64,000 bases of DNA, from NCBI GenBank assembly GCA_000708835.1, contig DF237312.1, forward strand, positions 34,680 through 98,679, written 5' to 3'. Each line of letters begins with the position of its first letter. The first letter of the stretch is position 1. This document shows, piece by piece, positions 1 to 55,400 of the stretch. Both the position numbers and the translations under genes were made by a program. This DNA is from Klebsormidium nitens. Taxonomy: Eukaryota > Plantae > Klebsormidiophyceae. The notes below the pieces were generated by a model. That model was given only the letters and a program-made list of their open reading frames with translations. It made no database searches and was not told where the DNA came from.

Positions 1-3000
1 GCCGCCACGGAACCCTCCCCCACGCAGTGCCCCTCCCCCTCCCAAGGCCAAGCTTTCCCCACCTCCGCCCCCCAAGAAAAACCCACCTCCTCCAACTCGT
101 CGCCCGCCACCTCCGAAAAGCCCCGTGCCTCCCCCACCACGCTCAAAAGCAAATCCCCCCCCGCCGCGGCGGGCCCCGCCTCCACCCCCTGTGAGGCAGT
201 GCAGGTCGACCTCCGATTGCCCCACGAATAAAGGCTGCTGCACCGAAGAGTCTACGGGCAAAGTTGGTGAGTGTATCTCACAAGGGTAGTATAGATATCT
301 CAAAAGAACTTGTTGACCTAAGGTTGACAATTTATCAGATTTGACAATCTGTGCGTGTTCCATGCACAAGCTGGTTGTTTGCTAAGTGATATCGAAAGAG
401 TTGTGTGATCTCTTTCATTATTTGCTAGCTCCTTCATTCCATTCGTAACGTTTGCAAAGACATAGATGGCTGCCAGTGATCCTGGCTGCCTCTTTTTGGA
501 CACGTCGTTACGTTGGAATTCCAGTTGCATGTGCAACTCGCTGTGCTTGAAATGAAAAGCACTACTACCCTGGCTTAGATTTAAGACATTCTGAGTTAAC
601 TCAGAGGATTCGGAGATATCACCAGGCACCCATTATGCACTATCAAAGAAAGGCCTTCTTTTCGTGGTTCTCTTTCAATAACTGTTGCGTATTTACATTT
701 AGATCTTTTCTCAGAAAGAAGACTCGCTCTTCTCATTGCTATGGTTTTTTTGACCTCTCTTACTCTCCGTTGCTTCATTAGAGCTCGAATGAAGAGCATC
801 GAAGTACTTCCAAGCTTCTTCTTCTTCTCTGGCAGCGCGTCCTTCATAAACGTCTTCTATCTCCGACCCTGACAATCGTGTCCACCCCTTTCCAGGCGTT
901 TGCACAAATGTGCCAGTATTGTCAAATGGAACCCAGGTCTGCTACAGCTGCAATTATTTCAACGGGCCGACCTGCCCTCCTGAATTCGGAGTATGCTGCT
1001 CCGACGGAGAGTGCAGAGCGTCGGCCAATGAGTGCACCTGTTTCTACACCTCATCCGACTGTCCAACAGGCCATTGTTGCAACCACGACTACTTTACGAG
1101 CTCTTCAGGTGCGCGACCCAAGGTCTATGAGACGAGCAAGGAGTTTACCCGCTAGCAGCATGATGGGGCCCCCTGTTGCGTGCTCAGAGAAATGACGCGT
1201 TGAATCTGCGCAGGGATCTCTTCAAGTGGGTTATCGTTCAGCTTCGAAGTTTCAAAATCTCTAGGCCTTCAAGCTGAAGTCTCTTGTAGAAAGAGTGAGG
1301 AGTGACACACGTGGTTCAATACCTAGGGCGCAGACGCTAGCAAGGTGTGCAATGTGTCTCATGCAAAACATTGATGAGTTGCAGTTGGCTTCTAGACCGA
1401 AACTGATCAAGGTGTTTGCTCTTTCTTGTGAGAAGTTGCCCACAATTTCTATGTCTTTTCTCCGGCAGGTTTCTGTACCGATATGCCAGTCCTTTCGAAC
1501 GGCACCCAGGTTTGTTTTGACTGTCATGATTTCAACGGCCTCGTCTGCCCTGACAACAAGGCTTTCTGCTGTCCCGACGGAAAGTGCGCTGCAAACGAGA
1601 GTGCATGCACCTGCCAATCCTCAGATTCATGCCCCGCTGGGTATTGCTGTACTGGATCGAACGGTGTCGATGGTAAGCGTTGTCACGCTTGGGCTTGTTC
1701 TTGTTCTGAAGGTTTCGACTGAATACATGTGACTTGTTTTGCAAGTGAACAGGCTCTTCGAGGTTGGCCAGTGGCATGCACGTTTGAGGTGCAAGCTTTC
1801 GAGAAGGGCGTTCTGTTGGTCTTGCTAGTTGCTGCTACCACTTCGCCATTTGTACGCACCTGTTACGACACGAAAGTCCTTGCAAATGGCATACAGGTCT
1901 GCCCGCAATGCAATAACTTCAACGGTCTCAGCTGCCCGACTTCCAAACCGTTTTGCTGCCCCAACCACGCAGAATGCGGCGCGAGTGAGAGCGGTTGCAA
2001 GTGCGAAGCCTGCACCTGCGACTACCTTAGCGAATGCCCCACCGGTTTCTGCTGTACTGAAGCGAGCCCCGGCCAGACAGGTGTGTTGCGTCGTTGCCAT
2101 CCGTCTGATCAAGATGTCGTCAGGAAGGTCGGCTCCTCAGTGTAGATCTCTATGCATTGATGATGCGGCGGCTAGGACGTTTGACGGTTTCTGAAACGTT
2201 TCTCTGAACACCTTTGGTCTATACCATGGCAATCCTAGCGCCGCCTATCAGGATCTTTGAGTCCCTTACGAGGATGAAACGCCGTTGGATTCCCTTGCTA
2301 TTCTTAGAGCTTCGGTCATTTGGGACCAACTTGACGTTGGCAACCATTTCAAACGTCGAGGGCCAAGCTCCCGCTGGATTGAGACGATGCGAAAGGGTGT
2401 TGTGAGTGCGTTACCCCGTGCAGAATACCTGGAGAATCAATTTGAGATCTCGCCGATAGCTATGGGCAGCCAACTAAGTCCTGCACGCTTCCTGTCCAGA
2501 TTGCCACCTTGAAGGGACAGTACACGTCTGGCTTTTTGGATTTTTCCCAAGCTGGGGTGGTCTTTCATCTCGCAATCTTTGGCAATCTGGTTTTTAGCTC
2601 TTCTCATCTGATGATCGGACTTTCACCTTCTTGTCCCAAATCAACATGATCCAAAGACGCGTGTCCCTGCAGGGAGGTGCACGAACGCGCCCATCAACAG
2701 CAGCGGCAAGCAGGTTTGTCCAAATTGCAACTATTGGAACGGGCTGAGCTGCCCCGCTGGCAAAGGAACGTGCTGCGCAAATTCAGGGCAGTGCGTTGCA
2801 TCTCCAACCTCCTGTCCATGTGAAGGCTCCTACGATTGCCCCTCCAACACTTGTTGCAGCACCGAGTACGAGTCCGACAACTTGAATTACAAGCAGGGTG
2901 AGTATAAGCTCAATACTGTAGCCGTGAGTACAATAACGTGATGACTGAGCGTAGGCCTGAAGTGTAACCCGGATAAATCCTAAGCGTACTCCACTTTGTT

Positions 3001-6000
3001 ACCAGTGAGAGCTCCGAGTCTGACAACCTGCTGGTGGGGTGCCTCCGCTGAAGGCCTGCTTCGTTGATGATCTCGAATGGCGGAAACCTATTTCAATGGT
3101 GGCCCACTCGGGCAAAGTCAAGCCCGGGTCGAGGGTCGCGTTCTCACTTTCTGCTTCCTGTGTAATTGCTTCTTTCTTCACTCCTCCGAGATTGCAAGCT
3201 GACTCGATCTTGTGTCACACAGGTATTGAGATTTTAGATGAGCTGTCAGTGCAAGAGAGTTGTTTCTCCAACATTAACCCTCCAGGAATTGCGCAAAATG
3301 TTCGATGTCGATCGTTGTTTCCAAATGTGTTGCAAGTATTTCGTTGTACGATCCTCTTCGTGTCCGGAATTTTGAGCCGCCACCTCAGACCTGCTGCACC
3401 CTCTCACGACCCCGGGTCGACGTCATTTCTGCAACCACCACTGAATTTGATAGCCTTTCTGACCGGTGACCACTTGCAAGTTGCAAAAACTTGCAAAATT
3501 CTCATCTGATTGTAATTCGTGGCTCGTGGTTTTCAATTCTGGCTCGATCGCTTTCACACCGTTCGCAGATTGGCAACAGCGACAAGATCAGGCAAAGTGT
3601 CTGATTGAAAGCTCCTCCTTTACCACTCGTAGGTACCTGTTACAAGAGAGCAGTCCTTGCAAACGGCACACAAATCTGCCCGAACTGCAACCTCTTCAAC
3701 GGTCTCAGCTGCCCCGCTTCTAAACCAACGTGCTGCCCCGCGTCAGGAGAGTGCGCTGCAAATGAGAGCGCATGCACCTGCGAATCGTCCTATTCATGCC
3801 CCGATGGGTTCTGTTGTACTGGATCGAACGGTGTCGATGGTAAGCATTGTCATGCTTGGGCATGTTTCAAAAGATAAAGGTTCTGATTGATTACCGGTGA
3901 CTTGTTTTACGAGTGATCATACTCTCTGAGATTGGCTTGGCATGAACGTACTTTGAAATGCAAGTTTTCGAAAAGGGCTTTCTGTTGGTCTTGCGCTAGT
4001 TGCTGCTACCACTTCGCCATGTGTAGGCACCTCTTACGGCACGCCAGTCCTTGCAAATGGCACACATGTCTGCCCGCAATACAATATCTTCAACGGTCTC
4101 AGCTGCCCCGCTTTCCAACCGTTCTGCTGCCCAACCGTGCAGAATGCGCCGCTGGTGGAAGCGGTTGCAAGTGCGGACGCTGCCCCTGCCAGTACTCCAG
4201 CCAATGCCCCACCGGTTTCTGCTGTACTGAGGAGGGCTCCGGCCAAACAGGTGCGTTGTGTCGTTGGCCTCCGTCTGTCAAGGTGTCTTTAGGAAAGTCG
4301 GCTCCTCACCTGTTGATCCATAAGCATTGACGATGTGACGGCTAGGACGCAAATTGATTTTTTCTTGGACGTTTCTGTGAATACCTTCGGTCTATCATTC
4401 GGTGACCAATCCCAGCTCCGTCTTCCAGGATCTTGGAGCACGTTGTGAGGATGAACGCCGTTGGGTTTCCCCCGCCATTCTGAGTAGAGCTTCGGTCATT
4501 TTTGGACCAACTTGACATTGCTGATCGTTTCAAAACTTCGTGGGCCAAGCTTCCGTTGGATTGAGACAATCCGAAAGGGTGCTGTGAATGCGTTACCCCG
4601 TGCATAATACCTAGGGAATCAGTTTGATCGCCGATAGCTACTGGCAGCCAAGCGAAGTCTTGCACGCTTCTTGTCCAGATTGCCACCGCCACCTCGAAAG
4701 GAAAGTACTCGTCTGGCTTTTGGATTTTTCCTAAGTTGGGGTAGTCTTTCATCACTCGAATCTTTGGCAAAAATAAAAAAATGCATTCTAAAATGTGCAG
4801 TAGACTTCTACCTTCTTGTCCCAAGCCAACATTATTGAAAGACGTCTGTCCTTGCAGGGAAGTGCACGGACGCGCCCATCGACAGTGGCGGCACGCAGGT
4901 GTGTCTAGACTGCAACGATTGGGACGGGCTGAGCTGCCCGGCCGGCAAAGGAACGTGCTGCGCAACGGGGCAGTGCGTCGCATCAGGAGCCTCCTGCCCA
5001 TGCTTCGGCTCCGACAACTGCCCGGACAACACTTGCTGCAGCCGCGAGTACGAGTACGACTACGACGACTACGAGTACTACCGTCCCAAGCAGGGTGAGT
5101 ATAACCCCAAAGCTCAGCACGATAATGTGATGGGTTAGCGTAACCCTGAAGTGTAACCTTGATTCAATCCTGAGCGCATTCCACGTTGTTACCAGTGAGC
5201 GCTTCGGTTCTGACCCTCCCTGCTGGGGGGGTGCCTCCGCTTGAAGGCCTGCTAATTTGCGCGGATACCTCGAACAGGGGGAATTGTGTACTGATGCAGG
5301 CCCTAGCCGGGCAAAGTCTGGCACGAGTTGAGGTTCCCGTTTATTTCTGCTGAGTGTGTGATTGCGTCTTTTTTCACTCCTCCGAAGTTGCAAGCTGATT
5401 CCATCTCGTGTCACACACGATTCTCTAGTCAAAAACTTATGAGATGTCAGTGCGGGAAGAATTCTTTTCCAACATCATCCTCCAGGATTTGCGTTGAATA
5501 CTATGTCGATCGTCTTTTCCAAATATGCTGCAAATGTTTTCAGTACGATCCTCCTCGTGACAGAAAAGCTCGAGCCGTCACCCAGAAATGTTGCGCCCTC
5601 TGACAACCCCGGATCGACGTCATTTGAAACTCTGACATCCTGAACTTTTCAACCATCCCTCACTTTTAGGACCTTTTTGACCGGTGACCACTTGCTCTCA
5701 ATCGATTGCATTTTGTCGCTCATGATTGCATTTCTGGCTTGATCGCTTTCACACCGTTTAAAGATTGGCAAAGGCGACAAGATTCCGACAGATTGTCTGA
5801 TTGAAATTCTCCTCTTCGCCGCTCGCAGGTACCTGTTATGGCTCGCCATTCCTTGGAAACGGCACACAAATCTGCCCAGACTGCAACAATCTGAACGGTC
5901 TCAGCTGCCCTGCCGGCAAAGGAACGTGCTGCCGGACAGGGGAGTGCGTTGCGTCAGGAATTACCTGCCCATGCAGAGGCGCCTCCGATTGCCCGGTCAA

Positions 6001-9000
6001 CACTTGCTGCAGCAGCAATTCCGAGTACGATCCCGACACCGGGGATTTAAAGCGGGGTGAGTATAACCCTAAAGCTGCAGTCGCGAGTACAATAACCTGA
6101 TTGGTTGAGCGTAACCCTGAAGCATAACCCCGGAAGAATCCTAACGTACTCCATGATGTTACCGGTAAGAGCTCCGAGTCCGACAACCTGCTGGTGGGGT
6201 GCCTCCGCTGAAGGCCTGCTAAGTTGGGCGGATACCTCGAATAGGGGAGTGTTGTACTGATGCCCAGTCGGGCAAAGTCAACCACGAGTCGAAGGTCCCG
6301 TTCTCAATTTCTGCTGCTTGTGTGATTGCGTCTTTTTTCAATCCTCTGAAGTTGCAAGCTGATTCGATGTCGTGTCTCACAAACTTTTTGGATTGTTAGG
6401 TAGGCTGTCAATGCAGACGGAGCTCTTTTCAAACTTTACCCCCTTAGGAACTGCTATGAAGGATATGTCAATCCTCTTTTCCAAGTATGCGGGAAGTCTT
6501 TCGTCTACGATTCTCTAAGTTGTGTCCGGGATTCTGAGCCGCCACATCAGGCTTGCTGCACCCTCTCACAACCCCGGATCGAGGTCATTTCTTCAAGCAT
6601 CGCTCAATTTGATAGCCGTTTCGACCGGTAACCACTTCTTCTCAAATGATCGCAACTCGTGGCTCATGGTTTTCATTCCGGCTCGATCGTATTCACACCT
6701 TTCACACATTGGTAAAAGCGACAAGATCGGGCAAAGTGTCTGTTTGAAATTTTCTTCTTTCCCGCTCGTAGGTACCTGTTACAACACGCCAATCCTTGCA
6801 AACGGCACACAAATCTGTCCGGAGTGCAACCGCCTGAACGGTCTCAGCTGCCCCGCTTCTAAACCAACGTGCTGCGCGTCAGGAGACTGCGCTGCAAACG
6901 AGAGCGAATGCCCCTGCCTGTCCTCATATTCATGCCCCGATGGGTTCTGCTGTTATAGATCGAACGGTATTGATGGTAAGCAATGTGACGCTTGGGCTTT
7001 TTCTAATTGGTGAAGGTTCTAATTGATTGCCTGTGACTTGTTTTACGAGTGATCAAACTCTTAAAGATTGACTTGGCCTACACGTACTTTTGAGGGTTCA
7101 AGGTTTCGAGAAGGGCGTTCTGTGGGCCTTGCTAGTCGCCGCTACCACTTCGCCGTGTGTAGGCGCCTGTTATGACGTGACACGCCAGTCCTTGCTTATA
7201 GCACAGTGGCACACAAGTCTGCCCGCAATGCAATAACTTCAACAGCCTCAGCTGCCAGGCTCTCACACCGATCTGCTGCCCCAATCACGCAGAATGCGCT
7301 GCAAATGAGAGCGGTTGCAAGTGCAAAGTCTGCACCTGCACGTACTCCGGCCAATGCCCCATTGGTTACTGCTGTACTGAGGAGAACTCCGGCCAAACAG
7401 GTGCGTTGTGCCGTTGGCCTCCGTCTGATCAAGATGTCTTCAGGAAGGTCGGCTCACTTGTCAATCCATAAGCATTCACGATGTGGTGGCTAGGACGACG
7501 CAATTTGATGTTTCCTTGGACATTTCTCTAAATACCTTTGGTCTATCGTATGGCAATCCCAGCGCCGCCTTTCGGAACCTGGAGCACGTTGCGAGGATGA
7601 AACACCGTTGGGTTTTCCCCGCCATCATTAGTGGAGCTTCAATTCGGTTATTTCTGGACCAACTTGACGTTGCTAACCATTTCAAAATGTCGAGGGCCAA
7701 GCTTCCGCTGGATTGAGACGATCCGAAAGGGCTTTGTGAATGCGTCACCCCGTGCAAAATACCTAGAGAATCACGTTGATCGCCGATAGCTACGGGCAGC
7801 CAACCAAAGTCTTGCACGCTTCCTGTCCACCTCGAAAGGAAAGTACTCGTCTGGCTTTTTGGATTCTTTTCAAGTTGGGGTAGTCCTTCATCACTCAATC
7901 TTTGGCAACCTGGTTTTTCGCATAATTTCTAAAATACTCAATAGACTTCCACCTTCGTGTCCCCAGGCAACATGATACAAACACGCGTGTCCTTGCAGGG
8001 AAGTGCACGAACGCGCCCATCGACAGCGGCGGCACGCAGGTGTGTCCAGACTGCAACGATGATTGGAACGGGCTGAGCTGCCCGGCCAGCAAAGGAACGT
8101 GCTGCGAAACGGGGCAGTGCGTCGGATCAGAAGCCTCCTGCCTGCCATGCAGAGGCTCCTACGATTGCCCGGACAACAATTGCTGCAGCCGCGAGTATGA
8201 GTACGACTACGACACCGGGAGTTACGCGCAGGGTGAGTATAACCAAAAGCTGCAGTGTGATTACGATGGGCGAACGTAACCCTGAAGTGTGACCCCGGAT
8301 GGATCCTAAGCGTACTCCACGTTGTTACCAGTGTCAGGCTTTTAGGGTTTTTGGGTGTCAGGGGTTTTAGGGATTGAGAGCTCCGAGTCTGTAAACCTGC
8401 TGGTGGGGTGCCTCCGCGGACGACGTGCTTCGTTGCGCGGATGACCCCGAACAGGAGAACTGTCTACCGATGCCCAGCCCGGCAGAGTCGGGCGCGAGTC
8501 GAGGGTCCCCTTCTCGCTTTCTGCTCCTTGTGAGATTGCGTTTCTTTTCACTCCTCCGAGGTTGCAAGCTGATTCGATGTCGTGTCACACAAATTTATTT
8601 GATTATATTCCCTCTCAGATGAGCGGTCAGTGCGGGAGAATACTTTCTCAACATGAACCCTCCAGTAATGCTCAGAATATCGTGTCGATCGTCTTTTCCA
8701 AATTTGCTGCAAGCAATTTGTGTCCGATCCTCCTCGTGTCTGGAAATTTCGAGCCGCCACCCTAGACTTGCTGCACCCACTCACGACCTCGATTCGACGT
8801 CATTTCTTTCAACCGTCGCTCAATTTCCATAGCCTTTTTGACTGGTGACCACTTGCTCCTGATCAATCGCAATTTGTGGCTCTTGCTTTGCAATTCCGGC
8901 TGGATCGCTTTCACACCGTGCTCAGATTGGCAAAAGCGAAGTTCCGGCAAAGTGTTTGATTGAAATCCTTCTCTTTTCCGCTCGCAGGTACTTGTTACAC

Positions 9001-12000
9001 CACGCCAGTCCTTGCAAACGGCACACAAGTCTGCCCGAACTGCAACTATTGGAGCGGGGTGGACTGCCCTGCCGGAAAAGAAACGTGCTGCGCAACGGGG
9101 CAGTGCGTCGCGTTGGGAACCACCTGCCCATGTAGAGGCGCCTCCGATTGCCCGGAAAACACTTGCTGCAGCCGCGAGTACGAGTACGACTTCGGGGGTT
9201 ACAAGCAGGGTGAGTGTAACCCAAATCTGCAGTCGCGAGTACAATGACCGAATCGGGTGAGCGAAACCCTAGAGCGAACCCCGGATGAATCCTAAGCATA
9301 CTCGACGTTGTTACCAGAGAGAGTTGCAAGTCTGGCAACCTGCTGGTGGAGTACCTCCGCCGAGGGCCTGCTTCGTTGCGCGGATGACCTCCAACAAGGG
9401 AACCGTATACTGAAGGTGGCCCAGTTGGGCAAAGTCAGGCACGAGTCGAGGGTCCCGTCCTCACTTTCTGTTGCTTGTGTGATCGATTCTTTTTTCGCTC
9501 CTCCGAAGGTGCAAGCTGACTCGCTCTCGTGTCACACAGATTTTTCGAATTCTTACAGATGAGCTGTCAGCGGAAAACAATTATTTTCAACATTCGCCCT
9601 CCAAGATTTGCGCTGGATGTTGAGTCGATCGTCTTTTCCGCACATGCTGCAAGTATAGCGTTTACGATCCGCTTCGCGTCCGGAATCTTGAGTTCAGACC
9701 TGGTGCACCCTCTCACGACCCCGGATCGACGTCATTCCTTTAGCCATCGCGCAACTTGATAGCCCTTTTCACTGGTGACCACTTGCTTTCGATTGATTGC
9801 AATCTGTGGCTCGTGGTTTTGATTTTGGCTCGAGTGCTTTTACACCGTTCACAAATGGGCAAAAGCGACAAGATCGGGCGAAGTGTCTGATTGAAATCTA
9901 CTCGTTGCCGCTCATAGGTACCTGTTACAACACACCAGTCCTTGCAAACGGCACACAAATCTGCGCGGACTGCAATTTTCTGAACGGACTCAGCTGCCCC
10001 GCTTCTAAACCAACATGCTGCCCGCTCGGAGAATGCGCTGCAAACGAGAGCGCATGCACCTGCCAATCGTCGGATACATGCCCCTCCGTTGATTTATGTT
10101 GTATTGGATCGAACGGTGTCGATGGTAAGCGCTGTCACGCTTGGGCTTGTTTGAAATGATGAAGGTTTCCAAGGATCGATCGCCTGTGGCTTGTTCTGCA
10201 AGTGATCAAACTCTTCAGTTTGTCTTGGCATGCACGTACTTTTGAGGTGCAAAGTTTCTAGAAGGACGTTATGTTGGTCTTGCTAGTTGCTTCTACCACT
10301 TTACCATTCGTAGGCACCTGTTACGACACGCCAGTCCTTGCAAATGGCACACAGGTCTGCTTGCAATGCAATTACTTAGAATGGTCTCAGCTGCCTGGCT
10401 TCCAAACAGTTCTGCTGCCCCCGTCACGCAGAATGCGCCGCGAATGAGAGCGGTTGCAAATGCGGAACCTGCCCCTGCGAGAACTCCAGCCAATGCCTCT
10501 TCGGTTTCTGCTGTACCGAAGAGGACTCCGGCGAAACAGGTGCGTTGTGTCGTTGGCCTCCGTCTAATCAAGATGTCTTTAGGAGAGTCGGCTTCTCACT
10601 TGTTAATCCATAAGCATTAACGATGTGGCGGCTAGAAGGACGCGATCTGATGTTTCCTTGGACGTTTCACTAAACACCTTTGGTCAACTATGGGACTCTC
10701 AGCGCCGCCTATCAGGATCTTGGAGCAAGTTCCGAGGTTGAAACGACGTTGGGTTTACCGCACCATTCTTAGAGCTTCGGTCATTTTCGGACCAACTTGA
10801 AGTTTGCTAACCATTTGAAAACGTCGAGAGCCAAGCTTCCGCAGGATAGAGATGATGCGAAAGGGTGCCATTAATGCTTTACCCCGTTAGCGATGCACTT
10901 TGATCACCGATAGTCAACCAACCAAGTCTTGCAAGCTTCCTGTCCGACTTGCCACCCTGAAGGGACATTCCTCGTCTGGCTTTATGGATATTTTTCAGGT
11001 TGGGGTAGTCTGTCATCAATCAATCCGGTCTTTGGCTCTTCTCCTCCAATCATTAAACTTTTACCTGCTTGTCCCCAGCCAACATGATTCATCGACGCGT
11101 GTCCTTGCAGGGAGGTGCACGAACGCGCCCATCAACGGCAGCGGCATGCAGGTGTGTCCAGACTGCAATTACTGGAACGGGCTGAGCTGCCCCGCCAGCA
11201 AAGGAACGTGCTGCTTATCGGGGCAGTGCGTGGCGCCGGATTCTTGCCCATGCACCGACGGCTGGGATTGCGCGTACAACACTTGCTGCAGCCGCGAGAT
11301 TGAGTACGACAACACCGGGAATCTCAAGCAGGGTGAGTGTAACACAAAGCTGCAAAACTCCAAAACTGCAGCCGAGTGTATGATAACCTGATGGGTGAGT
11401 GTAACCCTGAAGTAAAAACCCGGATGGATTCGAAAGTACTCCACGTTGTTATGATTAAGAGCTCCGAGTCTGACAATCTGCTAGTGGGTAACCTCCGCCG
11501 AATGCCTTCTTCCTTGCGCGGATGACCTCGAATAGGGGATTGAAGGTGGCCCAGTGGGCAAAGTCAGGCACAAGTCAAGGGTCCCGTTTTCACTTTGTGC
11601 TGCTTGTGCGATTGCTTCTTTCTTTAGTCCTCCGAAGTTGCAAGCTGATTTGATCGTGTCACACTGATGTGTCTGAATCATTAGATGAGCTGTCAGTGCA
11701 AATAATCTATTTCAACATTAACCCTCCAGGAATCGCGCTGAATGTTATGTCGATCGTCGTTTTCAAATATGATGCAAGCAGCTTCGTGTACGATCCTCTT
11801 CGCCTCCGGAAAGTTTGAGCCGCCACCTCAACATTGGCTGCACACTCTCACGACCCCGGATCGAAGTCATTTCGTCGACCATCGCTCAATGTTGATAGCC
11901 TTTTTGACCGGTGACCATCTGCTCACTGTCATTGATCGCTTTTTGCGGCTCATAAATTCAATTCCGGCTCTATTGCTTTCATAAACGCAGTCCACACGTT

Positions 12001-12213
12001 GGTAAAAGCAACAAGGTTGGACAAGGTGTCAGTTGGAAATCTTCTTCTTTGCCCCTCGTAGGTACCTGTTACGACACGCCAGTCCTTGCGAACGGCACAC
12101 AAGTCTGCCCGGACTGCAACTACTTCGACTTCTACGGTGTCAGCTGCCCCGACTCTAAATCAACGTGCTGCCCGTCAGGAAGGTGCGCCGTGAGCCTTGG
12201 AGGCTGCGGGTGA
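1..12213 (+). CDS. Pro-rich (extensin-like) stalk + Cys-rich repeat protein, paralog 1 (5' end outside window; multi-exon)
   Basis: Hand-spliced exons, all joined in phase 1: <1-266 (PPP-rich, ends PPPPVRQCRSTSDCPTNKGCCTEESTGKV|G), 896-1108, 1469-1672, [1856-2080, acceptor AC; alternative in-frame AG gives 1829-2080], 2673-2897, 3633-3839, [4027-4250 frameshifted], 4858-5094, 5829-6056, 6772-6975, [7163-7400 frameshifted], 7999-8232, 8988-9209, 9918-10124, [10314-10539 frameshifted], 11111-11332, terminal 12062-12213 (ends CCPSGRCAVSLGGCG*). Intact internal exons are multiples of 3, flanked by YAG and GT, and encode 12 Cys. The architecture mirrors paralog 2. Confidence 0.8.
1856..2080 (+). 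other. E-type Cys-rich exon copy 1 (14 Cys): ORF intact but homologous acceptor is AC
   Basis: TTTGTAC|GCACC at 1849-1860, versus GTGTAG|GCACC, GTGTAG|GCGCC and TCGTAG|GCACC in the other copies. An upstream AG (1827-1828) is 27 nt away and in frame. Confidence 0.75.
4027..4250 (+). pseudogene. E-type pseudo/poison exon copy 2 (-1 frameshift, two Cys lost)
   Basis: 224 nt versus 225. One C is missing at about 4130-4132 (TGCTGCCCAAC vs TGCTGCCCCAAC). TGT>TCT and TGC>TAC substitutions remove two Cys. Splicing to the next exon meets TAG early. Confidence 0.7.
7163..7400 (+). pseudogene. E-type pseudo/poison exon copy 3 (+13 nt)
   Basis: 238 nt. GTGAC is inserted near 7177 and TTATAGCACAG replaces AAA near 7196-7206. 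The entry frame reaches a TAA stop. Confidence 0.8.
10314..10539 (+). pseudogene. E-type pseudo/poison exon copy 4 (+1 nt)
   Basis: 226 nt. One extra base at about 10378-10380 (TACTTAGAATGGT). The entry frame reaches TGA inside the exon. Confidence 0.8.
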
Positions 12214-15200
12214 AAGACGCATCCCAGTGCCCGAGGAGGAGAGTGGCTAGCTCGGTGAGCCCTGCCTTATTGCGAAAGCAGTGTTCATATCTTCAAGTTT
12301 CGCATCATCCCTGTTGCAGCAGAGAAAAAGGACAGGGGGACTCTGAGGTCCCTGTATGTTCAGCCGCAATGGTACTCAGGTTGCAAGAGATGGGGGGGGG
12401 CTTGAGAAGCGCATAAGCGGCCACCCCCGGCCCCAAGTGGACAAATCAAGGCGGCGACTTGCACTTTCCGGCTTCTAGCAATGTCATCTCAGGTCTGGAT
12501 TCTCAGGGTTCTGGGTTTACAAACGTTGACAGCGCGACTTGCGAAGTGAGGCGATTCTGCTTGATTGGAAGCGCCTTGGTTTTTGTTGACTGTTTGCTTT
12601 TGTTGTGTTGGTAATCCTTTTGTGCCGCCGACGATCCGACCAGCCTGTACCCAAATTAGCGAAAAGAGAGGCCACCGTTAACCAGGCTGGTCTAGCCTAG
12701 CTTAGTTGTTGACTTCGATCAGCCCACCAGAAGCTTATCAATGTCTGGTTTCAAAGCACCGGCTCACCGACCATGACTGTAAACGAGATTAAATTGTCAG
12801 CTTCTTTAATGGTTTGGCCGAACACCACCCGAATCACTCGCGTCAGATCAATGACCCCTTTCACGCTTATGAATTGTTCCGTTTCAAGGCCTAGCCGACT
12901 CGGTTTCAGCACCCGACGAAGATTGCCTTTTGGTCCAAGTATATCGACTTTGACAATCAAACTTCCCTGGCTAAATGAATGCCAGGACAGCTCGCCGGGG
13001 GCAAACTCCGTACCCTTCAAAACCGTAATGATCCTGGTAAGCTGCTACGTACTGACGCGGTTGCCTTTCTTCTGCAGCGAAGGGGCCCTCGGAGGACCGG
13101 CTGGATTGCTGTTAGTGAATGGCAACCGAGTCGATGTGCTTACACCTAGATTTCTACTACCATATGTCTGGGGTCCGAAACGGACCTTGGAACGTGTGTT
13201 TCTTGTGACGAACCCCAGTGGTTAGGAGCAGATGCAACTCTTTGATGCGCTTTCTTTGTTTTGTTTTGATGCATGTTACAGGTTTCTCAGCTACTATACA
13301 AGTGCATCATAGTACAATAAGGAATTTGTAATGTTGTGACTATACCGTTAGCCATTCTCCTCCTTTGGTTATTTACCAGCCAGGAGCTATTGTGAATGAG
13401 TTTGAGGACCATGCAGGAGTTAATAGTAGCATCAGGTCTGTTGGCCGGAGGTGTCGTCACTAACTTATATTACCGTGAGCTATTTCTGATTAGATTCCTT
13501 TTCTACCATTTAGTTGCTAGCATCACGTTCAATTGATTGGCAGTGGATGAGATTAGCATCACGTTGGTCGTTAGCGTTCACGAACAACATTGACGCATGA
13601 TCTTGTTTTTTTTTTTTTTTTGAAACCACTCAGTTTACCTTCATTCGAAGTATCAACACACAATGAACCGGGTGTTGATGCATGACGTGGTGCATGAGAT
13701 CGGATCATGATGCGAGATAAAAGATGTACTCTTCAAATTTATTATTGATGTGCACCGTCGTGCAGCGCGGCCGCCTGATACAGACCGAGGCCACATCATT
13801 GCATACATGCACGTATATACTTTGAGACCAAGTACTGTACTTGAATACATGGACGGACAAAGGCCGCGCGGTTCAACGATACATACATACATACTTCTTT
13901 AAAAGGCCGTAGCAGTTAAGCCATGGACCTGAAAATGCTGGACAACCTGTAATCGATGAGTCCGGGGCGTTCAGTTCGACGAGCTATAACTACTCAATCC
14001 ATACTACCTTTCTATTCCTACATGCTGTTTATATTCTGCTTTTCTTCTAGTAGATTTTACCCAATCGTTACGGCCGTGATCAACGTCTTGCAGTTAGCTA
14101 AAACCGTTATCTGCTAACAACGGGGTTTCACAACCATCTCCTCAAGATAGCCACGCAAAACGTAGCTTCGACCTGCTTAATGTTGCTATGCTTTTGATTA
14201 AGTTGACGTTGGTGTCGCACAAGTATAAATAAAAACGCCCGCCGGGCCGCCATGTTTCAATCGGATGCAAAAGCCATTTGTATAGCAACCAGACATGTAT
14301 CATGTATGGTAGTGCCAGCTCTGCAAACTTGAAAGGAAGCTAAGGAGTCTGCATTTAGTAGGCGGCTACTATAAGCTTGCCCAATACGGATCATGCGGAA
14401 GTATGATCAGCTACATATTGGGTACGGGGCAATGCGGCGGGGCGCAGAGACGGCGCCGTACACTGAGCTTGGCGCGTTGGCTTTCAATGTGGAGCCAAAT
14501 TGGGGCCGAACTGGAGGTTTCCGGTCCCGAAAAGTGGCGGACGAACGTCCGGAGCTACAGCCCGATTTGAGGCCGATTCTCAGAAGGCACTGGTTTCAAT
14601 TCTTGGGAATTGGCTTCGATTGCGGGTACCTCCCTGCGGCTACGGGGCAGAAAGAGGAGCAAAGCGGCAGGGAGGCACTGGGGCTCACTTGCGCTAGCTG
14701 AGCTGGGCAACCGCACCAGTGCGCCGTTAGTAAAGATGTATGCGGATCAAGCAGGATTCTGAGGCGCAGCCCGGTGCTAAGCGGTTCCGGGAGGGGCGAA
14801 GGGAAGCAAACTCCTTCGTTGTCGGGGATAGCTCCATTCAAGCTTCAAGTGTGTCAGTTTAAGATGTAGTGCACGAGCAATCGGAAGCTAGAGTACCAAC
14901 CAACGCGCGCAAGACAGCTACGACGTCGAAGCACTCGGATCCGCTGAAAAAAGGCCCACCGTCCAGCACAGGAAGGTGGCAGATTGGTGGCAGAGTATTC
15001 AGCATTTCTTTCAATCTTCCCGTGCATCTGTTCAGCGCAGAGGAGCCCCAGCATTAGAGCACCGGACGGATTTTGGTGACAGCAGCCAAGATTAGTAAGC
15101 CAAATATAAGCGACACGATATCTTCGAAATTTCGCTCACTAGAAGTAAAACGAGCGTGCTTCTGCTCGGCCTGCCTCTGCGCCATTCCCGTTGCCGCAGA

Positions 15201-52428: not shown

Positions 52429-55400
52429 CTAGCACGCCGCCTTGCACATTCCATCGTTGCAACACGTTCTCCGGTTGGCCGGGCAGCTGAGTCCGTTGAA
52501 GTCGTAGCAGTTGGGGCACACCTGCTTCCCGGTGCTGTCGATTGGCTTGTTCATGCACTTCCCTGCGTTTCACACAGTTGAAACCTCGGGTTAAGCAAGG
52601 CAAGTCATCAACTGTCAAAACCAATTCCGCCAAGCGACAAACTCTTGTGGTTCTGCACCACTTTACACGGTCAGATCACTCTGCGTACAACCGATTCGCC
52701 CAGTCATCTCCCAAGGTTGCATATCATTGAGTCTGTCAATATCAGAACGCCTACCCTGCACACAGAACTTGCCGCTTCGAAACGTGGGAGAATCCAAATC
52801 GCGATATGGTTCGAGCGTGTTTGGGATCTTCGGCAAGTATGTAAATGTCAGGCAATCAACCGGGACGGCATTGGGTACTGCGGCCGAAAGTCGGCAAGTT
52901 TCAGGGCTCCAGCATCTACTGGTTGGACCCACACTTTAGAACAAGGCCATTTCACTTACCAGTATTGCCGCTGTAGTCCTCAGTGCAGCAAAACCCTCTC
53001 GGGCAGTCGCCGGAACCGAGGCAACTGCAGCTGAGGTCGTCTGCCGCGCATTCTCCGTATGGGCAACACACGCTCTTGTTAGCGGGGCAGCTCGCGCCAT
53101 TGAAGTCGGTACAGTACGGGCACACTTGGGTGCCGTTGGCGAGGACGGGTGTGTCCGTGCAGACGCCTGCGTCAGCAGCTAGGCTCGTGAGTCTTTCAAG
53201 GTACATCACTCCTAGGTGAAGGTGCGCAGTCAACCGAGTGACCTTCTCGGATTCGATGTGGGCCTGGAAACGCTAGTCTAACGGCAGCCTTGGTCTTGGA
53301 TCACAATTGAAAACGTAACGCCAATCGGATCAGCTTTTGATGCTTCATAAATCGAATCATCCTGGAAAAGGGCCGGTCAGAGATAGTAAAGATTGAGAAC
53401 GGGTTCCCGGATCGTGACACTTGCGCAACCGGGCACCGGGCCATCGAATCGTACGATCCCCTTGTCCCAACACAACAACAGTCCTGGCACGTCTTCAGTG
53501 GAGGCGCTCCAATAGCACGTGGCCAAAGTGAAAGCTGTTCCGTAGCCAGTACGACTGGCGTTCATTGGGGAAGTACTTGGACTCACCTCCTTGCAGCGTC
53601 GTCTCGTACTCGTGGGTGCAGCAGTAGCTGTACGGGCAATCACCGGGGCCGCGACACGGACAGGAGGCTTCAGATGCGGCGCACTGACCCAATGGGCAGC
53701 ACGTCCCTTTGCTGGCGGGGCAGCTCAGCCCGTACCAATAATTGCAGTTCGGACACACCTGCTTGCCGCTGCTGTTGATGGGGGCGTTCGTGCATTTCCC
53801 TGCAAGGACACGCGTTCTTTTGTAGCATGTTGGCTTACGACAACAATGATGAAGTAAGGGAAGCCCAATGGGACAATCGTTGATGGAGTGACTAGACACC
53901 CACCCAAGCGGAAAAAAAGCAGACCTACATCGATTGACGACCTTCAAGGCACTAAGATAGAGAAGCTTGGGTGTGGGTGACTGGCAATCATTGTCGGTGC
54001 GATTAACAGGAAATTTGAATCTCCTCAAGCATCCGTGCCGTCGTAGCACCCATTCAAAGCTCTTCGGCAAATTGGAGAACAATCATGTTTGAGAGCGATA
54101 AAAGCTTCCAGCGTTGCATGGAATACTGAGCAAACCATTCTAACTTCAGGTCCCAACCGTTGGTAACGGCGCTGAGATCCGCGGGAGTACGCTAGAAAGT
54201 TTTCACAAAGGAAAATTCTTGCCGACCAGAGGCAACTTGGCCGCCGAGTCATTGAGTCGATGGCGCATATCAGTGAGAAAGCAATCCCCACTATCAAAGT
54301 CGAAACGGACCGGAATCAATAATCACCTGTGGTGCCGGAACCCTCTTCCGTGCAGCAGTAACCGGAGGGGCATTGGCCGGAATCCTGACATGTGCAGGCA
54401 GCGTTGCTTGCGGCGCAAAGCCCATTTGGGCAGCATGTCCTCTTGCCGGCCGGGCAGCTGCCGCCGTTCAGACTGTTACAATTCGGGCAGACCTGTGTGC
54501 CGTTTGCAAGGACCGGCGAGCTGAAACAGGAACCTGCCAGCGGCACAAGATGTCAATGAAGCCATGGCTGGTTCTCGTTGGTTCGGAAGAAGCTTTTGCC
54601 AGCTTGTTTTTGCCACACTTTTGCCAGCTACTTTGAAGAACTTCCAAGATAGAAGCAGTCATAGTGGCCGCGGAGTGTGAGAACGGGACCCTCGAGTCTT
54701 GGATTTTGCGCAACCGGACAACGACCATTATAACCCCTACTCCAACGCAAATCCCGGCATGTCATTCGTGGAGGCGGCCCTAGAGCTGGCTGACAAACTC
54801 AAACTTAGAGAGCTGTCCCTTGTGAAAAACGTGAAAGTACGTTCCGCGTTCGTCAGAATTATAAGTCGGGCTCATACTCACCTTGCACGAAATCCCCGGT
54901 GGACGTGTACTCGTACTCGCGGCTACAGCAGTAGTTGGGGGGGCAAGAATCGGATGCTTTACACGGGCACGAAGCTTCCGACGCGGCACACTGCCCCGAA
55001 TACGCGCAGCACGTTGCTTTGCTGGCGGGGCAGCTCACCGTATACCAATAGTTGCAGTCCGGACACACCTGCTTGCCACTGCTGTTGATGGGGGCGTTCG
55101 TGCATTTGCCTGCAAGGACATGTCTCTTGAGACAATGTTGGCTGGGAAATTTCAAGAGTCTAAACTGACACCTTGAAGGCAATTGATTCTAGACAGGGTT
55201 AAAATGACGATCCCTGATCGTTGGTGCAATCGAAGTGAGTTCTGCAACTTGGCGCGCGCTTTATTGCCGTCGTACACCATCTGCCGCTTTCGAAAGTCGC
55301 CGAGCTAGGACGGCGAATTGGACGACAACTTGCTTAAGAAGTATTGAAGCTTCCAGAGGATCATGGGATGCCGGGCAGACCTTTCTAGATTCGTATATTG

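What the first reader, a model, noticed from the sequence alone, without database searches (positions are those of the whole stretch)
199..12213. Protein repeat is offset from the exon repeat: each domain appears to be built across a splice junction
Seen in both paralogs: the Pro-rich exon ends with only the last 4 Cys of the module (C-x5-C-x5-CC; CRSTSDCPTNKGCC at about 199-242, CRSTSDCPLNKGCC in paralog 2). The terminal exon stops after exactly the first 8 Cys (paralog 1 ...CCPSGRCAVSLGGCG*, paralog 2 ...CCNDGMCKAAC*). 4 + 8 = 12, so paralog 2 has 4 + 8x12 + 8 = 108 Cys = 9 complete units. Inference: the folded unit is the 3' third of exon n plus the 5' two-thirds of exon n+1. Skipping or exon shuffling would then create new chimeric domains rather than just delete domains, which is combinatorial diversity at the junction.
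Basis: partly seen in the sequence, partly recalled or inferred. Interest (0 to 1): 0.85.

Follow-up and report, generated by a model that had tools for sequence, protein, structure and literature searches.

The report
Algal cysteine modules split across exons
Two secreted cell-wall-type genes of the green alga Klebsormidium nitens are built from repeated exons that each encode the last two-thirds of one 12-cysteine module and the first third of the next, the same offset already known from animal granulin genes, here in a module family that has no name yet.

Summary
Both paralogs (+ strand 2-12213; - strand about 60875-52429) consist of phase-1 exons that each carry 12 Cys. Each has a 4-Cys cap on the proline-rich exon and a terminal exon that stops after Cys 8. 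Paralog 2 has exactly 108 Cys.

One correction for paralog 1: spliced RNA contigs show that its four "14-Cys" exons are used only as 8-Cys mini-exons, giving 176 Cys in total.

The interpretation, that the module runs from Cys 9 of exon n to Cys 8 of exon n+1, is supported but not proven:
- In about 28 homologs from four green algae, arrays start with the 4-Cys piece right after the signal peptide.
- Arrays end at Cys 8, at a stop codon or at the start of another domain.
- In Raphidocelis copies, Cys 11 and the next Cys 2 are lost together.
- AlphaFold2 is more confident and more consistent on the offset unit (pLDDT 91 versus 86).
- Paralog 1's stop arose by a 1-nt deletion exactly at the Cys 9 codon.

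No evidence was found for exon skipping or combinatorial splicing. The arrangement mirrors the known granulin "CN exons". Granulin membership failed the tests, and no Pfam or PDB relative was found. The scan noted this stretch before; I used those notes only as leads.

The parts
2..266 (+). 3' end of the proline-rich (extensin-like) exon of paralog 1, cut by the window start. It ends with the 4-Cys piece B (CRSTSDCPTNKGCC, 200-241) plus the linker TEESTGKV and the first base of the split Gly codon.
   Evidence: Translation. Joint 266|896 in RNA contigs of 4 runs.
896..1108 (+). Internal phase 1-1 exon, 12 Cys (A = C1-C8, then B = C9-C12, then linker).
   Evidence: Joints 266|896 and 1108|1469.
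1469..1672 (+). Internal exon, 12 Cys, linker TGSNGVD.
1973..2080 (+). 8-Cys mini-exon (E-C-x6-C-K-C-x2-C-x-B). It is the 3' part of the so-called 14-Cys exon and uses an internal acceptor cacgcag|AATGCG. The part 1829-1972 behaves as intron.
   Evidence: RNA contig carrying 1972-2077 joined to 2670-2896. Matches annotated product P0001. Acceptor conserved in all four copies.
2673..2897 (+). Internal exon, 12 Cys, acidic Tyr-rich linker.
3633..3839 (+). Internal exon, 12 Cys.
4143..4250 (+). Second 8-Cys mini-exon.
   Evidence: Joint 4250|4858 with 106 letters on the shorter side..
4858..5094 (+). Internal exon, 12 Cys.
5829..6056 (+). Internal exon, 12 Cys.
6772..6975 (+). Internal exon, 12 Cys.
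   Evidence: Present in P0001.
7293..7400 (+). Third 8-Cys mini-exon. Inferred from the conserved acceptor and donor and from P0001; not covered by reads here.
7999..8232 (+). Internal exon, 12 Cys (C8-LP-C9 here).
8988..9209 (+). Internal exon, 12 Cys (D-type).
9918..10124 (+). Internal exon, 12 Cys.
10432..10539 (+). Fourth 8-Cys mini-exon (inferred as for the third).
11111..11332 (+). Internal exon, 12 Cys.
12062..12213 (+). Terminal exon of paralog 1: A only (8 Cys), then Gly and TGA.
   Evidence: The 3' end was not checked with reads. The public model P0001 differs.
12214..12262 (+). Relic of the B-coding part of a D-type exon, now behind the stop. A 1-nt deletion turned the C9 codon into TGA. 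The DCP codons are still recognisable and the CC codons are lost.
   Evidence: DNA alignment with exons 8988 and 5829.
58860..60875 (-). Long proline-rich (SPPP/NPPP) exon of paralog 2, with an assembly gap of N near 59290. It ends with B (CRSTSDCPLNKGCC) plus the linker TEEYTGKV. The exact exon ends were not confirmed.
52961..58206 (-). Eight internal 12-Cys phase-1 exons of paralog 2: 58206-58000, 57578-57372 (GC donor), 56723-56499, 55784-55578, 55109-54882, 54533-54327, 53799-53587, 53166-52960.
   Evidence: No reads laid here.
52429..52562 (-). Terminal exon of paralog 2: A only (8 Cys), with the stop directly after C8 (CKAAC*).
   Evidence: The same ending type is seen in P0002 and Mesotaenium P0008, P0009 and P0010.

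Best explanation
**What the genes are.** The window holds two paralogous genes of Klebsormidium nitens for secreted chimeric glycoproteins. Each has an extensin-like proline-rich stalk followed by a rod of cysteine-rich modules.

**The module.** It is a disulfide-closed 12-Cys unit, written here B-linker-A:
- B = C9-x5-C10-x4-C11C12
- a linker ending in a conserved Gly-x
- A = C1...C8

Consecutive modules are joined by a single residue (C8-x-C9).

**Where the introns sit.** The phase-1 introns lie inside the module, in the codon of the conserved linker Gly, not between modules. Every internal exon therefore encodes A of one module fused to B of the next. The first coding exon supplies a lone B and the last a lone A. 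The mature protein is a whole number of modules.

**How arrays grow.** They grow by tandem duplication of exon blocks (about 3.1 kb, four exons in paralog 1). This automatically keeps the module register.

**Shown versus inferred.** Shown:
- the exon structure and splicing of the first 6 kb;
- the Cys arithmetic;
- the family-wide termini.

Inferred:
- that B and the following A are cross-linked;
- the suggested disulfide pairs C11-C2, C4-C7 and perhaps C1-C3;
- secretion and a cell-wall role.
For: 1. **Termini across the family.** The profile search found only about 28 true relatives in 1.84 billion proteins, in K. nitens, Mesotaenium, Edaphochlamys and Raphidocelis.
   - The signal peptide is followed directly by B in P0004, P0008, P0013, P0014 and P0030.
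   - A proline-rich stalk is followed by B in P0001, P0002 and window paralog 2.
   - Arrays end at C8 with a stop in both window paralogs, P0002, P0008, P0009 and P0010.
   - Arrays end at C8 followed within about 5 residues by an unrelated conserved domain in P0006 (twice), P0011, P0017 and P0019.
2. **Paired losses.** In P0006 (both arrays) and P0017, a B lacking C11 (..GYAC) is followed by an A lacking C2. Cys parity is even only in the B-A register. C4 and C7 are lost together in P0006 and P0017.
3. **Linker.** In homologs the B->A linker is a fixed 9-10 residues, CC(T/S)G(N/D)xxxxGxC, with Gly >90% conserved. The A->B spacer is one residue nearly always.
4. **AlphaFold2 with matched 73-row alignments.**
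   - B-A unit: mean pLDDT 91.2, pTM 0.71, five models 88-91, 60 of 74 residues >=90, and a strand at G-x-C1-x.
   - A.B unit: mean pLDDT 85.7, pTM 0.64, five models 86, 86, 81, 54, 47, 10 of 66 residues >=90, and no strand at the start of A.
5. **Secondary truncation.** Paralog 1's terminal exon is a former full A.B exon cut by a 1-nt deletion exactly at the C9 codon, with a B relic in the 3' UTR. This is a second, independent cap at the same boundary.
6. **Intron positions elsewhere.** In Edaphochlamys P0003 introns also fall in the B->A linker (1-2 residues after CC), and none was mapped between C8 and C9.
Against: - No disulfide map or model coordinates were available. The pLDDT difference of 91 versus 86 is modest.
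- P0004 (Mesotaenium) is SP-B-(A.B)x7-Pro-rich-Peptidase_C1, so it has an orphan B. P0012 also ends with a modified lone B. If these models are right, B can stand alone. P0004 is, however, a truncated gene model.
- In K. nitens the linker varies from 8 to 25 residues, with acidic Tyr-rich inserts. That looks like a flexible spacer.
- The four mini-exon units of paralog 1 pair a B with only 4 Cys (C7, C8 and two extra), so a B there lacks C2 and its other presumed partners.
- The paired-loss cases come from one species and probably one ancestral event. Several algal gene models are visibly imperfect.
- P0017 has a B without C11 and C12 followed by a complete A.
Confidence: 0.62

Rival explanations
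1. Beads on a string. A (8 Cys, four internal disulfides) and B (4 Cys, two internal disulfides) are two separate, self-closed mini-domains that alternate. The register question is then moot. The B...A termini would only reflect the history of exon duplication from an ancestral B | A gene.
For: - Both caps have even Cys numbers.
- An orphan B occurs in P0004 and P0012.
- Linkers in K. nitens are long and variable.
- B is followed by a non-A 4-Cys piece in the mini-exon units.
- The AlphaFold2 model of A.B is still fairly confident in three of five models.
Against: - Co-loss of C11 with the next C2 leaves odd Cys counts in B and in A separately.
- Independent modules give no reason why arrays in four genera always open with B and close with A.
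- The linker length and its Gly are conserved in most homologs.
- The strand at G-x-C1 forms only when the upstream B is present.
Confidence: 0.27
2. Exon equals domain. The folded unit is the exon-encoded A.B (C1-C12), the variable tail is the inter-domain spacer, and the two caps are degenerate partial domains.
For: - Classical 1-1 symmetric exons usually match modules.
- The C12->C1 stretch is the only length-variable, low-complexity part in K. nitens.
- C8-x-C9 is too short to be a flexible hinge.
Against: - It would require a broken third of a domain at every N-terminus and a broken two-thirds at every C-terminus, conserved across four genera.
- Cys parity is odd in this register for the Raphidocelis variants.
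- AlphaFold2 confidence is lower and unstable in this register.
- The truncation of paralog 1 falls inside such a domain.
- Other domains start right after C8.
Confidence: 0.06
3. Divergent granulin. The B-A unit is a true but very divergent member of the granulin/epithelin family. It would have inherited the granulin split-exon organisation rather than reinventing it.
For: - The ends of the unit resemble granulin ends (C-x5-C-P-x4-CC ... CCP-x3-C-x6-C).
- UniRef names P0030 'Granulins domain-containing protein'.
- hhalign lays the B-A unit end to end on algal and plant granulins (58 columns), but lays the A.B unit on only 19 columns.
- P0004 links the array through a Pro-rich hinge to a papain-like protease, as plant RD21-type proteases link to granulin.
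- The exon logic is the same as N | CN | C (PMC4527844).
Against: - The hhalign probability is only 6.6%.
- The best Pfam Granulin hit is E=6.3, 7.5 bits, against a cut-off of 20.9, and there is none for P0030.
- There was no PDB sequence hit.
- There was no fold hit to any granulin structure by Foldseek or VIA-align.
- The central Cys pattern differs: four single Cys in place of two CC doublets, with much longer loops.
Confidence: 0.2

Closest known systems
Granulin/progranulin genes (N, C and CN exons; PMC4527844)
   Same: - Tandem 12-Cys modules.
[quoted passage not shown]
- Internal exons carry the C-terminal part of one module and the N-terminal part of the next.
- The first exon supplies a lone N-part and the last a lone C-part.
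- Arrays grow by exon duplication.
- Half-modules (paragranulin) can occur alone.
- The module termini look alike.
- In the green lineage granulin sits next to papain-like proteases via a Pro-rich hinge.
   Different: - The split is 4+8 Cys rather than 6+6.
- Only two CC doublets are present instead of four.
- Loops are longer and the unit is about 68 aa against about 55.
- Modules are joined by one residue instead of a spacer.
- There is no significant Pfam, PDB-sequence, profile-profile or fold match.
Chimeric hydroxyproline-rich glycoproteins of green algae and plants (extensin-like stalk plus globular Cys-rich head, such as volvocine pherophorins; from general knowledge)
   Same: - A signal peptide, seen in an upstream ORF of paralog 2.
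- A long SPPP/NPPP stalk.
- A Cys-rich non-proline part.
   Different: The head here is a long tandem array of a different, unnamed module. No pherophorin or other Pfam domain is detected.
Dickkopf N-terminal / prokineticin-colipase type small disulfide-rich domains
   Same: These are the weak nearest shapes in the ESM Atlas search (TM 0.39-0.41). Dickkopf_N also gives weak Pfam hits in 3 of 66 units (best E=0.029).
   Different: All scores are below any threshold. These domains have 10 Cys with other spacing. No homology is claimed.

Membership tests
Granulin (Pfam PF00396) | Match to the family HMM above the gathering score. | tested here: not met
   The best hit is 7.5 bits, E=6.3, for window:3635-3838, against a cut-off of 20.9. 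Of 66 B-A units none matches. P0030 gives no hit.
Granulin (Pfam PF00396) | 12-Cys motif C-C-CC-CC-CC-CC-C-C with four CC doublets. | tested here: not met
   The unit is C-C-CC-C-C-C-C-CC-C-C. The outer thirds fit and the central doublets are replaced by single Cys with x12, x2 and x6 spacings.
Granulin (Pfam PF00396) | Profile-profile similarity to bona fide granulin domains. | tested here: inconclusive
   hhalign of A4 against four algal and plant granulins (A8) gives probability 6.6%, with 58 colinear columns. In the exon register only 19 columns align. The granulin profile had only 4 rows.
Granulin (Pfam PF00396) | Stacked beta-hairpin ladder fold. | tested here: inconclusive
   The AlphaFold2 model of B-A (pLDDT 91) finds no PDB chain at Foldseek E<=0.001 and none at VIA Z>=2. 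Small disulfide-rich folds are hard to match, and the model coordinates could not be inspected.
Granulin (Pfam PF00396) | Module encoded across two exons, with internal exons spanning two modules. | tested here: met
   Exon map and RNA joints. Family termini. Precedent read in PMC4527844.
Knottin / inhibitor cystine knot (label used by earlier notes of the scan) | Six-Cys core with 1-4, 2-5, 3-6 knot connectivity. | not testable with these tools
   No coordinates or disulfide map were available. Only sub-threshold toxin-family Pfam hits were found.
Extensin-like hydroxyproline-rich glycoprotein (chimeric) | Repeated Ser-Pro(3-5) motifs in a secreted protein. | tested here: met
   A 535-aa ORF has 200 Pro and many SPPP/NPPP runs. 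An upstream ORF carries a signal-peptide-like MAPISVWLCLVLGAHILAA. Hydroxylation and glycosylation are not testable here.

The most novel reading that the evidence does not exclude
The B-A unit is a previously undescribed disulfide-closed 12-Cys fold, confined to green algae (Chlorophyta and streptophyte algae) and unrelated to granulin. It would have independently arrived at the granulin-type gene design. Because every intron cuts the module, each exon duplication, loss or skip creates a chimeric module (B of one lineage with A of another). This recombination of half-modules would then be the way the family diversifies its surface.
Probability: 0.2. Interest if true: 0.65.

Novelty: new variant of a known kind. 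Interest (0 to 1): 0.45.

Why it matters
The result gives a second, apparently independent example of the granulin-type gene design, in which repeat exons are offset from the protein module. It occurs in a small, unnamed cysteine-rich family of green algae that sits on extensin-like stalks and, in one Mesotaenium gene model, next to a papain-like protease.

It bears on how exon duplication keeps modular proteins in register. It also warns annotators that exon-based domain boundaries and "pseudo-exon" calls can be wrong here.

The family has no Pfam model and no structural relative, so a solved structure would probably add a new small disulfide-rich fold. It does not open a long-standing question, and the proposed splicing-based diversity has no support so far.

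Tried and rejected
- **Complex prediction** on the last two exon peptides of paralog 1 (11113-11331 with 12064-12210). No verdict: score 0.00, my alignments were not used, and the partner's own fold was uncertain. This counts neither for nor against.
- **Foldseek PDB, VIA-align wide PDB and the ESM Atlas shape search** with the B-A model. No usable match.
- **The protein-atlas search by features.** Nothing found.
- **Pfam** on exon peptides, on 66 B-A units and on whole homologs. Nothing significant except Peptidase_C1 in P0004.
- **PDB sequence search with the B-A profile.** One chance-level hit, 2ndi, E=0.39.
- **First automatic Cys-column table**. It was unusable and was redone with match-state columns.
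- **Exon mapping of Raphidocelis P0006 by tblastn.** It missed most of its tiny exons. It only showed that some odd Cys counts coincide with exon junctions, so they may be model errors.
- **P0006 as evidence for orphan A.** Rejected, because the model looks like two tandem genes fused.
- **P0013 and P0014 as "arrays ending in B".** Rejected, because they stop 1 residue after CC and P0013's last B repeats the previous one, so they are probably truncated.
- **Tandem Repeats Finder.** It sees nothing because the DNA period is about 3.1 kb.
- **Literature searches** for the locus tags and for Klebsormidium Cys-rich extensin chimeras. Nothing on this family.
- **Rule followed on spliced sequences.** No self-joined spliced sequence was given to any search or folding tool. 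Junction-spanning pieces were taken only by reference from database proteins (P0001, P0004 and others), and the joined-model step was left out.
Full report
**What is there**

The window is eukaryotic, about 50% GC, with introns of 300-960 nt. On the + strand from 2 to 12213 lies the 3' part of a gene whose public product is P0001. That is Klebsormidium nitens KFL_003630080 (GAQ87590.1), annotated as a hypothetical protein.

A convergent paralog lies on the - strand from about 60875 to 52429. Both start, as far as can be seen, with a very proline-rich SPPP/NPPP exon. Paralog 2 has a 535-aa ORF with 200 Pro. Upstream of it is an ORF containing MAPISVWLCLVLGAHILAA, which looks like a signal peptide.

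**The observation**

The proline-rich exon ends with CRSTSDCPTNKGCC at 200-241 (frame 2), followed by TEESTGKV and a split Gly codon. The donor is g|gtgagt at 266. Paralog 2 has CRSTSDCPLNKGCC in the same place.

Twenty-two exon peptides align with all Cys columns conserved (A1). Each full exon reads:

x-C1-x12-C2-x2-C3-x6-C4-x6-C5C6-x4-C7-x6-C8-x-C9-x5-C10-x4-C11C12, then 8-25 variable residues.

I call C1-C8 "A" and C9-C12 "B".
- All internal exons are phase 1-1 with AG|G acceptors and G|GT donors. One donor, at about 57372, is GC.
- Both terminal exons stop right after C8: CAVSLGGCG* at 12213 and CKAAC* at 52429.

**RNA check**

Logan contigs of four runs from four studies show GT..AG joints at 266|896, 1108|1469, 2080|2673, 2897|3633, 4250|4858 and 5094|5829. 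The runs' kind was only guessed as RNA, but the contigs are spliced. The exon borders of the first 6 kb are therefore real.

The contigs also correct one point. The "14-Cys" exons are entered at an internal acceptor (cacgcag|AATGCG) at 1973 and 4143. They therefore contribute only 108-nt mini-exons encoding E-C-x6-C-K-C-x2-C-x-B, with 8 Cys. This agrees with P0001. The same acceptor and donor are conserved at 7293-7400 and 10432-10539.

Paralog 1 therefore has 4 + 11x12 + 4x8 + 8 = 176 Cys.

An apparent long skip, 1671->4142, has only 23 letters on one side. It is explained by 25 identical bases at the ends of exons 1469-1672 and 3633-3839. I saw no reliable exon skipping. Some unspliced contigs exist (1643-2001 and 2870-3661).

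**Which register is the module?**

*(a) Relatives.* A profile of the exon peptides found only 32 proteins with E<=0.001 among 1.84 billion, and about 28 of them are true relatives. They come from K. nitens, Mesotaenium endlicherianum, Edaphochlamys debaryana, Raphidocelis subcapitata and a few unnamed assemblies.
- *How arrays open.* The signal peptide is followed at once by B in P0004, P0008, P0013, P0014 and P0030. A proline stalk is followed by B in the K. nitens proteins.
- *How arrays close.* Arrays close with A at C8. This is at a stop in P0002, P0008, P0009 and P0010. Elsewhere C8 is followed within about 5 residues by a conserved unknown domain of about 570 aa (GKDVAKYQAFH...). That is the case in P0006 (twice), P0011, P0017 and P0019.
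- *Conclusion.* A domain can begin at C9 and end at C8. No reliable case begins at C1 after a signal peptide.

*(b) Linker.* In most homologs the B->A stretch is a fixed 9-10 residues, CC(T/S)G(N/D)xxxxGxC. Its last Gly is >90% conserved. That Gly is the codon split by the K. nitens intron. The A->B spacer is a single residue almost everywhere.

*(c) Natural Cys losses.*
- In both arrays of P0006 and in P0017, a B lacking C11 (..GYAC) is followed by an A lacking C2. Counts are then even only in the B-A register.
- C4 and C7 vanish together in P0006 and P0017.
- One P0006 unit lacks C1 and one of C2/C3.

These losses suggest the pairs C11-C2, C4-C7 and perhaps C1-C3. That implies at least one bond from B into the following A. 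The cases are few, come from one species, and sit in imperfect gene models.

*(d) AlphaFold2 with matched 73-row alignments.*

| Unit (first row of alignment) | Mean pLDDT | pTM | Five models | Residues >=90 | Strand at G-x-C1-x |
|---|---|---|---|---|---|
| B-A (P0004:28-101) | 91.2 | 0.71 | 88-91 | 60 of 74 | present |
| A.B (P0004:50-115) | 85.7 | 0.64 | 86, 86, 81, 54, 47 | 10 of 66 | absent |

*(e) Secondary truncation.* The terminal exon of paralog 1 is a former full D-type A.B exon.
- Its DNA stays alignable to exons 8988 and 5829 beyond the stop.
- A 1-nt deletion changed the C9 codon into TGA.
- The DCP codons survive and the CC codons are gone.
- The older terminal type, C-[KR]-A-x-C-stop, is shared by paralog 2, P0002 and Mesotaenium. 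Paralog 1 therefore acquired a new cap independently, at the same C8|C9 point.
- The public model P0001 avoids this stop with an intron of about 55 nt that lands in the relic (RVASS...) and gives an odd Cys count. I think that is a prediction artefact but could not test it.

*(f) Intron positions elsewhere.* In Edaphochlamys the mapped introns also fall in the B->A linker, 1-2 residues after CC, with extra introns inside A. None was mapped at C8|C9.

**What speaks against a strict 12-Cys module**

- P0004 reads SP-B-(A.B)x7-Pro-rich hinge-Peptidase_C1. One B is therefore unpartnered. P0012 ends with a re-spaced lone B.
- K. nitens linkers are long and variable, with SREYEYDYD... inserts.
- In the four mini-exon units a B is followed by only four Cys.
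- P0017 has a B without C11 and C12 before a complete A.

B may therefore be able to close on itself. The bead model, with A and B each self-closed, remains a serious rival. I put it at about 0.27, against 0.62 for the offset module and about 0.06 for exon = domain.

**Comparison with known systems**

The gene design is that of granulin. [quoted passage not shown]

Hints of real kinship:
- The module ends look alike.
- UniRef's automatic name for P0030 is "Granulins domain-containing protein".
- P0004 links the array to a protease through a Pro-rich hinge.
- hhalign lays B-A end to end on four algal and plant granulins retrieved (domains located, alignment A8).

The tests nevertheless fail or are inconclusive:
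- hhalign probability is 6.6%.
- The best Pfam Granulin hit is E=6.3.
- There is no PDB sequence hit.
- There is no fold hit.
- The central Cys pattern is different.

I therefore describe it as working like granulin genes but do not file it as a granulin.

**Function (inferred)**

These are most likely secreted, extensin-stalked extracellular-matrix proteins carrying a stiff rod of disulfide-rich modules. A role in wall architecture or adhesion, or in binding or regulating proteases, is possible. None of this was tested.

**Verdict**

- The core interpretation is supported but unproven.
- The combinatorial-splicing extension is unsupported.
- In kind this is a new variant of a known arrangement, found in an unnamed algal module family.

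Noticed in passing
window 1829-1972, 3957-4142, about 7202-7292, about 10380-10431: The 5' parts of the four '14-Cys' exons carry lost Cys, frameshifts or lost acceptors and behave as intron. The 3' parts are expressed as 8-Cys mini-exons from a conserved internal acceptor. They are remodelled exons, not dead ones.
   Followed up: yes
window 12182-12236 and about 13123: The public gene model P0001 (GAQ87590.1) skips the in-frame stop at 12211 with an intron of about 55 nt and runs on to about 13150. This gives a 27-aa tail with one Cys. It is probably a prediction artefact.
   Followed up: partly
window about 59290 (- strand ORF 60875-59271): A run of N (an assembly gap, read as XXXXXXX) lies inside the proline-rich exon of paralog 2, so the stalk length is uncertain.
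   Followed up: no
window 61426-61142 (-): An ORF contains MAPISVWLCLVLGAHILAASRNLAAAQG. It is a likely signal-peptide exon of paralog 2, about 300 nt upstream of the proline-rich exon.
   Followed up: partly
P0006, P0011, P0017, P0019 (C-terminal about 570 aa; for example P0011:326-565): In Raphidocelis and an unnamed assembly the Cys-module arrays are followed by a conserved large domain (GKDVAKYQAFHEMF... LLCP... HDHSLP...) with no Pfam match. This is another unnamed family.
   Followed up: partly
P0004:527-684: A Mesotaenium gene model joins seven modules through a PPPPPSPPPS hinge to a papain-like Peptidase_C1 domain without an I29 propeptide. This is the reverse order of plant RD21-type protease-granulin proteins. 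The model is truncated and may be a fusion artefact.
   Followed up: partly
window 57372 (-): The second internal exon of paralog 2 has a GC donor (acag|gcgagt) instead of GT.
   Followed up: partly
P0007 (KFL_003630020) and P0001 (KFL_003630080): A third family member lies on the same 98.7-kb K. nitens contig as paralog 1, and P0002 (KFL_000020760) lies on another contig. The family is a small multigene cluster.
   Followed up: no
window 3.1-kb period: 3633/6772/9918, 4858/7999/11111, 5829/8988/12062: Paralog 1 grew by tandem duplication of a four-exon block (B-type, mini, A-type, D-type). The last copy supplies the terminal exon.
   Followed up: partly
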